The notes beneath the pieces were generated by a model. That model made no database searches, was not told the DNA's origin, and was given only the letters and a program-made list of their open reading frames with translations. A stretch of DNA of 63,598 nt, counting the filler, from Octopus bimaculoides (lineage: Eukaryota), in the NCBI RefSeq assembly GCF_001194135.2. It is 4 parts of 3 records of this genome, joined end to end, with 100 filler letters (N's around TTAATTAATTAA, not from the genome) between each part and the next. Parts side by side here need not be neighbours in the genome. Positions count along the whole stretch, not along the records: positions 46,034 to 60,151 come from NC_068982.1; 3 more parts are not named here. One strand, written 5' to 3'. Positions 48,349 to 49,503 of this stretch are shown piece by piece. The position numbers and the translations under genes were made by a program. Position 1 is the first letter of the stretch. The number at the start of each line of letters is the position of its first letter.

Positions 48349-49503
48349 ATGACCAGTGAAAGGTGTGTTATTTCTATGGAACAATTTCGCCATAAGTATT
48401 GGCAAACCCATCCCGAATCGTTGATGGAAATGAGTAACATTTTCTGGAGTTACCATAAAGTAAGTGCTACCTGTCTTAGATATGTTGGATTCTTCGATAA
48501 ATATCGTTTACAAAATCTTTCAGAACACTTTAATGATACCGAAGAGATCATCAATCTTGGCATCAACATGAATTTTTCGTGGGATGTTGTTGATAGTATA
48601 ATAAGAGAAAACAACATGGATATAAAAAGATTAGGGGAAATTTTGTTGACAAACTATATTTTGGTGAGTCACGAAGGCGACGAAAAAACTGTCGAGCAGA
48701 TTGTGAATATATTTTGCGAAATCGGTAAAAATAATTGTGGTATAAAAATTGAAGAAGATTTTCGATGCTGGTCGCAGCAAACTTGTGACAAATATAAGAA
48801 ATTGGATGAGATCGAAAAGAAGTTCAAAGACGGTAAAACTGAAAAACAACTGAGAGTATTTGGGTGGCAAATGAAACACACACCCGAACGATTCTTCGAT
48901 TATCTTGGAAATTTTTGTTCACTTAAAGAATACGATAAAGAAGTATTTGTTGATCTTACTAAAAAAGACTTAAATGATATGGCAGTAGAATTACTAAAAA
49001 ATGCTCCTGTTGAGTTTGCCTTTCAATATTTACCTTCAGCTGCTAAATACCATTACGATTCCAGGTTAGTCCTTCCCTTAGAATGGATAGCAATTAACCC
49101 TGATTCTGATAAAAAGTATTACTCAAATGAAAAATTAATGTGGCTATTCGCCACACATGATTTTGATAAATCCATATTTCATAAATTCATGTTACAAAAC
49201 TTTCCTAAAGAAGGAGTTTTTAAGGAATTTCTTGAAAAACATCCGCAGAACCAAACAATTTCCACATTTCAAATCCTTATGTATGTATTGGGAAGTAAAT
49301 CAAGTTCAAGTTGTGACTATACTAAAAATATGAAAATTCTAAAAATGTTTGAACCTTTTGAGAGATTTGTTTCGCTGTTCCAGGATAATTGCAAAGTTGA
49401 AAAGATGTTAGTTTTTAAAAATATTTCTACCCATGACGCTTTATTATATGTAATTATAATTTTCCTAATCTGCGGATGCTTTAAAAAAAATCCTGTTTTA
49501 TGA
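48349..49503 (+). CDS. Uncharacterised intronless 384-aa protein, death-fold-like N-terminal domain, hydrophobic C-terminus
   Basis: 384 stop-free codons in very AT-rich DNA. Residues ~52-137 (LQNLSEHF...INLGINMNFSWDVVDSIIRENNMDIKRLGEILLTNY...TVEQIVNIFCEIGKNNC) show death-domain-like helix periodicity. Ends LLYVIIIFLICGCFKKNPVL. Confidence 0.7.
   Translation: MTSERCVISMEQFRHKYWQTHPESLMEMSNIFWSYHKVSATCLRYVGFFDKYRLQNLSEHFNDTEEIINLGINMNFSWDVVDSIIRENNMDIKRLGEILLTNYILVSHEGDEKTVEQIVNIFCEIGKNNCGIKIEEDFRCWSQQTCDKYKKLDEIEKKFKDGKTEKQLRVFGWQMKHTPERFFDYLGNFCSLKEYDKEVFVDLTKKDLNDMAVELLKNAPVEFAFQYLPSAAKYHYDSRLVLPLEWIAINPDSDKKYYSNEKLMWLFATHDFDKSIFHKFMLQNFPKEGVFKEFLEKHPQNQTISTFQILMYVLGSKSSSSCDYTKNMKILKMFEPFERFVSLFQDNCKVEKMLVFKNISTHDALLYVIIIFLICGCFKKNPVL

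What the first reader, a model, noticed from the sequence alone, without database searches (positions are those of the whole stretch)
48349..49503. Intronless death-fold-like protein with possible tail anchor: candidate lineage-specific innate-immune or apoptosis adaptor
Seen: the only long uninterrupted non-transposon ORF apart from KAT6 (384 codons, AT-rich, preceded by an in-frame TAA at 48337). Inference: residues ~52-137 follow death-domain-like spacing (hydrophobic helix, L-G-I-x-x-x-F-S, V-V-D-S-I, E-I-L-L, T-V-E-Q-I-V-x-I-F-x-E-I-G-K). A ~200-aa unrecognised, probably helical region follows, then LLYVIIIFLICGCF-KK, a short hydrophobic segment with Cys and basic residues. Death fold plus C-terminal anchor is the logic of adaptors such as MAVS (CARD + TM). 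Caveat: the tail could instead be intron read-through (TAT|GTAATT at 49450) or a frameshifted end, since another frame reads ICNYNFPNLRML*KKSCF... The ORF sits on the same strand as KAT6 but beyond an artificial join, so nesting in a KAT6 intron is unproven.
Basis: partly seen in the sequence, partly recalled or inferred. Interest (0 to 1): 0.75.

Follow-up and report, generated by a model that had tools for sequence, protein, structure and literature searches.

The report
Octopod death-domain protein with membrane tail
This is a real, intronless gene so far found only in octopuses and argonauts; its protein combines a predicted death-domain fold, a highly conserved unknown middle region and a short hydrophobic C-terminal tail, which makes it a plausible but untested membrane-tethered signalling adaptor.

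Summary
The 384-codon ORF at 48349..49503 (+) is exactly as described and far beyond chance. It is a genuine gene. Full-length uninterrupted orthologues exist in Octopus vulgaris (91% aa), another Octopus species (82%) and Argonauta hians (55%; dN/dS 0.36 at dS 0.87). Against Argonauta, only the ORF still aligns.

Residues 46-152 fold in AlphaFold2 as a confident six-helix bundle (pLDDT 87). Its top 22 PDB matches are all true death domains (FADD, Fas, PIDD, ankyrin, TNFR1, TRADD; TM 0.6-0.76). Sequence profiles stay below threshold (Pfam Death E about 0.1; hhalign not significant).

The hydrophobic tail (residues 364-378, followed by KK) is conserved in all four orthologues. Neither candidate internal splice donor is conserved, so the tail is coding, not intron read-through.

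The best-conserved part is an unrecognised central region (153-245) with motifs TPERFFDYLGNF and NAPxxFAFQYLPSA. No family or structure matches it.

A tail-less paralogue clade exists, about 52 kb away in O. vulgaris. No transposon or viral relationship was found.

The immune or apoptotic role is inference only, and expression was not testable here.

The parts
48349..49503 (+). Complete intronless CDS (384 codons plus TGA)
   Evidence: Uninterrupted orthologous ORFs occur in O. vulgaris (L005 9926-11077, 91% aa), a Logan Octopus species (L001, 82%) and Argonauta hians (L003, 55%). dN/dS is 0.31-0.53.
48337..48339 (+). In-frame upstream TAA that fixes Met1 as the start
   Evidence: The last ~30 nt before the ATG are invariant in three Octopus species. 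In Argonauta the frame opens only two codons before the ATG.
48349..48483 (+). N-terminal region, residues 1-45 (conserved FR..W...P..L...W pattern; two low-confidence helices)
   Evidence: 16% of columns are invariant across both clades.
48484..48804 (+). Predicted death-domain fold, residues 46-152 (six helices)
   Evidence: AF2 domain model: pLDDT 87.1, pTM 0.76. Foldseek PDB: top 22 hits are all death domains, e.g. 3ezq_B TM 0.70/0.76 and 2of5_H RMSD 2.3 A. Pfam PF00531 is matched end-to-end but below threshold, E about 0.1.
48805..49083 (+). Most conserved, unrecognised core, residues 153-245, with motifs FGW..K.TPER[FY]FDYLGNF.SL and L[KN].AP..F[AG]FQ[YF]LPSA..Y
   Evidence: 33% of columns are invariant across clades A and B. 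dN/dS against Argonauta is 0.175 for alignment columns 140-245. No Pfam or PDB match.
49084..49398 (+). Variable, probably helical C-terminal region, residues 246-350, including a Ser-rich stretch
   Evidence: 9% of columns are invariant. AF2 confidence is low. No Pfam or PDB match.
49438..49482 (+). C-terminal hydrophobic segment ALLYVIIIFLICGCF (residues 364-378), followed by KKNPVL and the stop: candidate tail anchor
   Evidence: Kyte-Doolittle mean 2.95; the next best segment in the protein scores 1.0. Conserved in four orthologues and absent in clade B. The codons change while keeping hydrophobic residues.
48128..48182 (.). Near-invariant upstream block with CCAAT (48133-48137): candidate promoter or 5'UTR element
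   Evidence: Three-species alignment: at most one mismatch per sequence, within flanks that are 75-80% identical.

Best explanation
The ORF is a functional, single-exon, octopod-restricted gene. Its product has four parts: a short N-terminal extension, a death-domain (DD-subfamily) six-helix bundle at about residues 46-152, a strongly conserved domain of unknown fold at 153-245 followed by a variable helical region, and a 15-residue hydrophobic C-terminal segment followed by basic residues and then at most 6 further residues. The most likely mechanism is that the tail inserts post-translationally into an organelle membrane (ER or mitochondrial outer membrane). The rest of the protein would then face the cytosol, where the DD nucleates or joins homotypic DD assemblies and the conserved core binds a partner. 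That would make it a membrane-tethered adaptor, analogous in logic to MAVS or CARD19 but built on a DD. The tail-less paralogue clade could be a soluble partner or regulator. Shown here: that the gene is real, its conservation, the predicted fold and the conservation of the tail. Inferred: membrane insertion, DD oligomerisation, and any immune or apoptotic role.
For: Real gene: the ORF is far beyond chance. Full-length orthologues occur across Octopodidae and Argonautidae. dN/dS is 0.31-0.53 within Octopus and 0.36 against Argonauta at dS 0.87. Against Argonauta, only the ORF still aligns. The locus is collinear with O. vulgaris. DD fold: two independent AF2 runs give the same confident six-helix domain. 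The Foldseek PDB top 22 are all DD-subfamily domains with prob about 1 and TM 0.6-0.76, while CARD and PYD hits score lower, TM about 0.5. The best viral-library hit is also a death-domain protein. Pfam Death aligns end-to-end (profile positions 4-83 of 86) in two members at E about 0.1. Tail: it is the only strongly hydrophobic segment, is conserved in four orthologues, is followed by KK or KN, and there is no N-terminal hydrophobic signal. The candidate splice donors at 49066 and 49450 are not conserved, while the encoded residues are. Not a mobile element: no TE or viral domain or relative was found, and only two clades were recovered.
Against: No sequence-based method reaches significance for a death domain. 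Pfam gives 13 bits against a cutoff of 22.6 and nothing for Argonauta, clade B or a consensus. A PDB profile search finds no DD. hhalign against a FADD profile gives P=0.023, probability 2%. All Foldseek E-values are above 0.03. The hydrophobic segment is only 15 residues, short for a bilayer span. Two thirds of the protein could not be modelled (pLDDT below 50), and its best-conserved part has no known relative, so the main activity may lie outside the DD. There are no expression data. The O. vulgaris annotation models a different, spliced, truncated product (P0002).
Confidence: 0.5

Rival explanations
1. The protein has a DD-like fold, but the fold is accessory or structural, as in the ankyrin or THOC1 death domains. 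The real activity would lie in the highly conserved 153-245 core, a new binding or catalytic module, and the gene would have no link to immune or death signalling.
For: The core is the best-conserved region across both clades: 33% invariant columns against 21% for the DD, with the lowest dN/dS, 0.175. Ankyrin and THOC1 death domains are among the top structural matches. No TRAF2, RHIM, pLxIS or BH3 motif is conserved.
Against: Most characterised DD-subfamily domains act through homotypic assembly (established knowledge). A conserved membrane tail next to a DD matches the adaptor logic. No alternative function can be named for the core.
Confidence: 0.27
2. The death-domain resemblance is a false positive. 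Residues 46-152 would be a generic helical bundle and the gene an orphan of unknown fold that merely carries a hydrophobic C-terminus.
For: All sequence-level tests are non-significant. Foldseek E-values are 0.03-0.3. The AF2 alignment holds only 5 sequences.
Against: pLDDT is 87 in all-helical Greek-key topology, consistent across five models and two runs. The top 22 hits all come from one subfamily, with TM up to 0.76 and RMSD 2.3-3 A over about 90 residues. The sub-threshold Pfam alignment is global, not a fragment.
Confidence: 0.15
3. The gene is a domesticated or decaying transposon, viral or retroposed sequence rather than a host gene of its own kind.
For: It is intronless, AT-rich, lineage-restricted and set among SINE and LINE debris. 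A hAT/ZBED5-like fragment lies near the paralogue.
Against: No TE or viral domain was found in any member. The IMG/VR scan found no relative and the viral structure library gave nothing significant. Only two clades were recovered in billions of proteins. The locus is collinear between Octopus species. The 68-nt inverted repeats at 46457 and 51877 are SINE copies that also occur in tandem, not element termini. Purifying selection has held over dS 0.87.
Confidence: 0.05
4. The C-terminal tail is not part of the protein, because of intron read-through or a frameshift. The true product would be the spliced short form annotated in O. vulgaris.
For: The O. vulgaris model P0002 splices out at AG|GTTAGT (window 49066|49067), and that donor is kept in three Octopus species.
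Against: The frame stays open to the same end in all four orthologues, with dN/dS 0.45-0.6 downstream of the donor. The Argonauta annotation calls the full 380-aa intronless product.
Confidence: 0.03

Closest known systems
DD-subfamily death domains (FADD, Fas, PIDD/RAIDD, TNFR1, TRADD, RIPK1, ankyrin, THOC1; Pfam PF00531)
   Same: Predicted six-helix bundle of about 90-100 residues that superposes at TM 0.6-0.76 and RMSD 2.3-3 A. The weak Pfam alignment covers the model end-to-end.
   Different: 12-19% identity and no significant sequence or profile match. Helix 6 is unusually long (residues 128-160). The partner domains are unknown.
MAVS (N-terminal CARD plus C-terminal tail anchor on the mitochondrial outer membrane)
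   Same: Same architectural logic: an N-terminal death-fold domain, a long linker or other region, and a single C-terminal hydrophobic anchor with a very short lumenal end (MAVS facts are established knowledge; MAVS is used as an OMM marker in PMC8997538).
   Different: The death fold here is of the DD type, not CARD; CARDs match worse, TM about 0.5. There is no sequence homology. No Pro-rich region or conserved TRAF2/pLxIS motif is present. The middle is a conserved folded-looking domain rather than a disordered linker.
CARD19 / BinCARD-2 (CARD plus transmembrane segment, mitochondrial outer membrane)
   Same: A small death-fold protein held on an organelle membrane by one C-terminal-side TM, with the death fold facing the cytosol (PMC8997538).
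   Different: CARD19's TM is more central and is followed by a ~37-residue distal C-terminus needed for targeting. Here at most 6 residues follow the segment. It is a CARD, not a DD, and there is no homology.
Death receptors and UNC5/p75NTR (type I membrane proteins with a cytoplasmic DD)
   Same: A DD tethered to a membrane.
   Different: Those proteins have a signal peptide, an ectodomain and a TM on the N-terminal side of the DD. This protein has no N-terminal hydrophobic segment, and its only hydrophobic stretch is at the extreme C-terminus.

Membership tests
Death domain superfamily, DD subfamily (Pfam PF00531 / clan CL0041) | Compact six-alpha-helix antiparallel bundle of about 80-100 residues with death-fold topology | tested here: met
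   The AF2 domain model has six helices, pLDDT 87.1 and pTM 0.76. The Foldseek PDB top 22 are all DDs, TM 0.6-0.76, RMSD 2.3-3.0 A. The full-length model gave the same result. This rests on a predicted structure, not an experimental one.
Death domain superfamily, DD subfamily (Pfam PF00531 / clan CL0041) | Sequence match to the family profile at or above the curated threshold | tested here: not met
   PF00531 scores 13.1 bits (E 0.11) against a cutoff of 22.6, in 2 of 5 members. Argonauta, both clade-B proteins and a consensus gave nothing.
Death domain superfamily, DD subfamily (Pfam PF00531 / clan CL0041) | Profile-profile similarity to a bona fide DD family | tested here: inconclusive
   hhalign of A4 against a 24-sequence mammalian FADD-DD profile gave P=0.023 and probability 2%, aligning only H4end-H5-H6. 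The template profile was narrow, with all members at least 64% identical to human FADD. HHpred against Pfam/PDB was not available.
Death domain superfamily, DD subfamily (Pfam PF00531 / clan CL0041) | Homotypic DD:DD assembly | not testable with these tools
   Needs biochemistry or complex modelling.
Tail-anchored membrane proteins | A single hydrophobic segment within about 30 residues of the C-terminus, with no other TM and no N-terminal signal sequence | tested here: met
   Residues 364-378 have a KD mean of 2.95, and at most 6 residues follow. The next best segment scores 1.0, and the N-terminus is polar. The segment is conserved in 4 orthologues.
Tail-anchored membrane proteins | Hydrophobic span long enough to cross a bilayer (usually about 17-22 residues) | tested here: inconclusive
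   Only 15 uncharged residues lie between D363 and K379. Windows of 17 and 19 residues give positive summed Hessa-scale values (a simple sum, not the full predictor).
Tail-anchored membrane proteins | Post-translational membrane insertion with the N-terminus in the cytosol | not testable with these tools
   Needs localisation and protease-protection assays.
MAVS / CARD19-type membrane-anchored death-fold adaptors | Homology to MAVS or CARD19, with a CARD-type death fold | tested here: not met
   No sequence hits were found. CARDs match worse than DDs (TM about 0.5). The resemblance is architectural only.
Transposable element or viral gene | TE or viral protein domains, many copies, terminal repeats, or viral relatives | tested here: not met
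   No such Pfam domain was found. Only two clades appear in 1.8 and 5.8 billion proteins. The IMG/VR scan was negative, BFVD gave nothing significant, and the locus is collinear across species.
Leucine-rich repeat proteins | Tandem LRR units of about 24 residues | tested here: not met
   Only one LRR-like unit is present (TPERFFDYLGNFCSL). The LRRC15 and VLR hits have E 0.3-0.6 and there is no Pfam LRR hit.

The most novel reading that the evidence does not exclude
An octopod-specific family founds a new class of signalling platform. It would be the first tail-anchored adaptor built on a DD-subfamily death domain, coupled to a previously undescribed conserved domain (TPERFFDYLGNF / NAPxxFAFQYLPSA). 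It would work on an organelle membrane as a functional analogue of MAVS in cephalopod innate immunity or cell death, with tail-less paralogues as soluble regulators.
Probability: 0.22. Interest if true: 0.72.

Novelty: new variant of a known kind. Interest (0 to 1): 0.45.

Why it matters
Cephalopod innate immunity and cell-death signalling are poorly mapped. Most predicted components are orthologues of vertebrate or insect genes. A conserved, lineage-restricted protein that puts a death domain on a membrane anchor next to a new, highly conserved domain would be a concrete, testable entry point into cephalopod-specific signalling.

It is also an annotation lesson. The gene is modelled as a truncated, spliced 'hypothetical protein' in O. 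vulgaris. No identical protein was found in the searched collections for the window's own genome. So it is easy to miss.

If the DD call or the membrane anchoring fails, what remains is an ordinary lineage-specific orphan gene.

Tried and rejected
- Pfam on the full protein and on each region of all members gave only sub-threshold noise: PI3_PI4_kinase, COBRA1, NLE, VCIP135_N and 2CompARG.
- PDB sequence and profile searches on the full protein, the DD, the core and the C-terminal region found nothing. Ribosomal S2, RsfS, LRR proteins and a glycosyltransferase appeared at E of 0.06 or higher.
- hhalign against FADD, both as a single verified sequence and as a mammalian profile, was not significant. 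The last homologue search returned only mammalian FADDs, so the template profile was narrow.
- The exhaustive profile search of 1.8 billion representatives found no relatives outside octopods.
- The IMG/VR scan was negative and the BFVD fold search gave nothing significant.
- Rfam found nothing in the piece.
- The idea that the 68-nt inverted repeats at 46457 and 51877 bound a mobile element carrying the ORF was rejected. They are SINE-like copies that are also present in tandem at 46492-46778, and the flanks are collinear with O. vulgaris.
- A GPI-anchor reading of the tail was rejected because there is no N-terminal signal peptide. CAAX and KKxx readings were rejected because the motifs are absent.
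- Rapid evolution of clade B is not claimed. Gene and 5' flank together are 71.5% identical, against 83.9% for clade A, so the two B genes may be out-paralogues.
- The accession SRR11869384 was not found in the literature, so the Logan species and library type remain unknown.

Full report
OBSERVATION. The raw sequence confirms the in-frame TAA at 48337-48339, the TAT|GTAATT at 49450 and the C-terminal ...ALLYVIIIFLICGCFKKNPVL*. The ORF has 32% GC, and in such AT-rich DNA stop codons are frequent. The other five frames of the same interval carry 10-47 stops each. The longest ATG-ORF in 500 shuffles of the 46300-52000 neighbourhood averaged 80 aa with a maximum of 178, against 384 observed. Within the piece, the other long ORFs are microsatellite translations, N-filled artefacts or retrotransposon fragments. 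RVT_1 domains lie at 55099-55665 and 58190-58561 on the minus strand.

IT IS A REAL, CONSERVED, INTRONLESS GENE. A word-indexed search of 5.8 billion proteins found three relatives:
- a 381-aa protein from Logan assemblies of runs SRR11869384/85 (82% identity, full length);
- a 228-aa 'hypothetical predicted protein' of Octopus vulgaris (89% over the N-terminal 59%);
- a 380-aa hypothetical protein of Argonauta hians (55%, full length).

tBLASTn on the fetched loci shows that the O. vulgaris genome in fact carries the whole 384-codon frame uninterrupted (L005 9926-11077, 91% aa identity, no gaps). The truncated, spliced model P0002 is therefore an annotation artefact or at most an alternative isoform. 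The Argonauta gene is annotated as a single 1143-nt exon. Octopus and Argonauta belong to different families of Octopoda: Incirrata.

Nei-Gojobori estimates give the following:

| Comparison | dN/dS | dS |
|---|---|---|
| window vs O. vulgaris | 0.31 | 0.13 |
| window vs Logan species | 0.46 | 0.19 |
| window vs Argonauta | 0.36 | 0.87 |

At the Argonauta distance, only the ORF still aligns at the DNA level (48379-49504, 71%) and the flanks do not. Between Octopus species the locus is collinear over 46.6-55.5 kb. ORF nucleotide identity is 94.7%, against 82-93% in the flanks. No identical protein was returned for the window's own sequence. So the gene is apparently unannotated in, or absent from, the collections for the source genome.

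THE DEATH-FOLD CLAIM. By sequence the claim is not established. Pfam on the full protein gave only a sub-threshold PI3_PI4_kinase hit, and PDB sequence search gave nothing. On the isolated region, PF00531 (Death) matched two of five members end-to-end (profile 4-83 of 86), but at E about 0.1 and 13 bits against a 22.6-bit cutoff. Argonauta, both clade-B proteins and a family consensus gave no Death hit. A profile search of PDB found no death domain. I verified a recalled human FADD DD sequence as 100% identical to PDB 9ncq_H and used it for hhalign. Against the single sequence the result was probability 0.2. Against a 24-sequence mammalian FADD profile it was P=0.023, probability 2%, aligning only the H4-end/H5/H6 segment ('HEGDEKTVEQIV' on 'EKENATVAHLV').

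By predicted structure the claim is well supported. A full-length AF2 run with a 4-sequence alignment was poor overall (mean pLDDT 47). It did give a confident six-helix segment at about residues 50-148 (pLDDT 71-87). Foldseek on that model already ranked PIDD/RAIDD, Fas/FADD, ankyrin-G, TNFR1, RIPK1 and TRADD death domains first, with target-normalised TM about 0.7.

A second run on residues 46-152 alone with five sequences gave pLDDT 87.1 and pTM 0.76, and all five models scored 83-87. The helices are at 6-13, 19-28, 33-42, 47-62, 67-79 and 83-106 of the segment. Its top 22 PDB matches are all DD-subfamily domains: FADD, Fas, PIDD, ankyrin-1/G/B, TNFR1, TRADD and THOC1. They have probability about 1.0, TM 0.59-0.70 (query-normalised) and mostly 0.6-0.76 (target-normalised), and RMSD mostly 2.3-3.4 Å over 85-100 columns. 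CARD and PYD domains follow at TM about 0.5. E-values (0.03-0.3) do not reach significance, so I put the fold assignment at about 0.75-0.8. In the viral structure library the best hit is again a 'death domain-containing protein' of a marseillevirus (TMq 0.60), and nothing is significant.

THE TAIL. ALLYVIIIFLICGCF (residues 364-378) is the only strongly hydrophobic stretch. Its Kyte-Doolittle mean is 2.95 and the next best segment scores 1.0. It is bounded by D363 and K379-K380 and followed by only NPVL. All four clade-A proteins keep it: ALLYIIVIFLFFGCFKNK in the Logan species and ALIYIIIMILFYNCFKKRTIL in Argonauta.

The GT at 49450 exists only in the window and O. vulgaris. The Logan Octopus and Argonauta have TAT ATA there, a conservative V-to-I change in an open frame. 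The donor used by the O. vulgaris model (AG|GTTAGT, 49066|49067) is kept in three Octopus species but is AAT ATA GTG in Argonauta. The frame downstream of it stays open with dN/dS 0.45-0.6.

The topological criteria for a tail-anchored protein are therefore met. The span is short (15 residues), so true bilayer insertion is inferred, not shown. GPI, CAAX and KKxx readings do not fit.

(i) The best-conserved part of the protein is not the DD but residues 153-245. There, 33% of columns are invariant across six proteins of two clades, against 21% in the DD and 9% further downstream. The region's dN/dS against Argonauta is 0.175. It carries two near-perfect motifs, FGW..K.TPER[FY]FDYLGNF.SL and L[KN].AP..F[AG]FQ[YF]LPSA..Y. 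Nothing in Pfam or PDB matches. The best non-significant PDB hits are LRR proteins, because TPERFFDYLGNFCSL looks like one LRR unit. P-V-E-F-[AG]-F at residue 220 fits the loose TRAF6 consensus in clade A only. AF2 could not model this region with the shallow alignment.

(ii) There is a paralogue clade B. The exhaustive profile search of 1.8 billion representatives added P0004 (345 aa, 33% identity by tBLASTn). It is intronless and lies on the same O. vulgaris chromosome about 52 kb from the orthologue, in the opposite orientation. A further profile search added P0005 (352 aa) from the Logan species. Clade B keeps the N-terminal region, the DD and the core but lacks the hydrophobic tail. The two B genes differ more than expected (dS 0.41, omega 0.73, and gene plus 5' flank 71.5% identical against 83.9% for clade A). 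They may be out-paralogues, so I draw no rate conclusion.

NOT A TRANSPOSON OR VIRUS. No member has a TE or viral domain. Only two clades exist in the protein collections. IMG/VR holds no relative. The inverted 68-nt repeats at 46457-46524 and 51877-51944 belong to a SINE-like family that also sits in tandem at 46492-46778. Rfam finds nothing in the piece.

An independent transcription unit is plausible. A ~55-nt block at 48128-48182 containing CCAAT (48133-48137) is nearly invariant in three Octopus species amid flanks of 75-80% identity, and the 30 nt before the ATG are invariant. The first AATAAA lies 390 nt after the stop. Expression itself could not be tested.

MECHANISM AND COMPARISON. 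The most likely model is a membrane-tethered DD adaptor. The tail would insert post-translationally, the DD would assemble homotypically in the cytosol, and the conserved core would bind a partner. Architecturally this is the logic of MAVS (CARD plus tail anchor; established knowledge) and of CARD19 (CARD plus TM on the mitochondrial outer membrane, with the CARD facing the cytosol; PMC8997538). There is no homology to either. The death fold is of the DD type, and the middle is a conserved domain rather than a linker. Death receptors also tether a DD to a membrane, but with the opposite topology. I know of no described tail-anchored DD-subfamily protein, and a literature search on octopus death-domain and immune genes turned up none. 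That is absence of evidence from one search.

VERDICT. The structural interpretation (death fold, tail anchor, lineage restriction) is largely supported by predicted structure and conservation. The functional label (immune or apoptosis adaptor) remains inference. I rate it a new variant of a known kind, of moderate interest.

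Noticed in passing
window 48128-48182 (CCAAT at 48133-48137) and 48320-48348: A ~55-nt upstream block and the last ~30 nt before the ATG are nearly invariant in three Octopus species, while the surrounding flank is only 75-80% identical. 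This is a candidate promoter or 5'UTR element of the gene.
   Followed up: partly
window 48222-48307 vs 47509-47594: An 86-nt direct duplication (85% identical). The proximal copy sits between the conserved upstream block and the ATG. Its central ~65 nt is missing from both O. vulgaris and the Logan Octopus, so it is an insertion specific to the window's lineage in the putative 5' region.
   Followed up: partly
L005 10001-15938 (O. vulgaris OX597815.1, about 100.98 Mb): The annotated O. vulgaris protein P0002 (228 aa) starts at internal Met26 and splices out at codon 239/240. The genome nevertheless holds the full 384-codon frame, so this is a likely mis-annotation.
   Followed up: yes
L004 10001-11038 (O. 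vulgaris) and L006-L009 (Logan runs SRR11869384/85/90/91): A tail-less, intronless paralogue clade (345-352 aa) lies about 52 kb from the orthologue in inverted orientation in O. vulgaris. The two known members are unexpectedly divergent (55% aa, dS 0.41), so further paralogues may exist.
   Followed up: partly
window 48880-48924 (residues 178-192) and 49003-49047 (residues 219-233): The two most conserved motifs resemble each other (TPERFFDYLGNF and APVEFAFQYLPS), and the first resembles a single LRR unit. This could be an internal repeat or a new interaction motif. It is not statistically supported.
   Followed up: partly
window 46457-46778 and 51877-51944: SINE-like repeats: a tandem pair (46492-46607 and 46654-46778, 85% identical) and an inverted copy 5.3 kb downstream (68 nt, 93% complementary). 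Together they bracket the gene, but they are not element termini.
   Followed up: partly
window 55099-60083 (minus strand), with an N gap at about 58634-59040: Degraded non-LTR retrotransposon copies: RVT_1 fragments at 55099-55665 and 58190-58561, plus ORFs at 59490-60083 that were not identified. A related copy lies near the O. vulgaris paralogue, L004 18317-20033, 88% identical.
   Followed up: partly
window 46034-46230 and 60072-60151: Long (TG/TA)n-type microsatellites at both ends of the piece produce spurious 80-94-aa 'ORFs'.
   Followed up: no
L004 5368-5808 (minus strand): A FAM200/ZBED5 RNase-H-like (hAT-derived) fragment lies 4 kb upstream of the O. vulgaris paralogue. It is probably an unrelated transposon remnant.
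   Followed up: no
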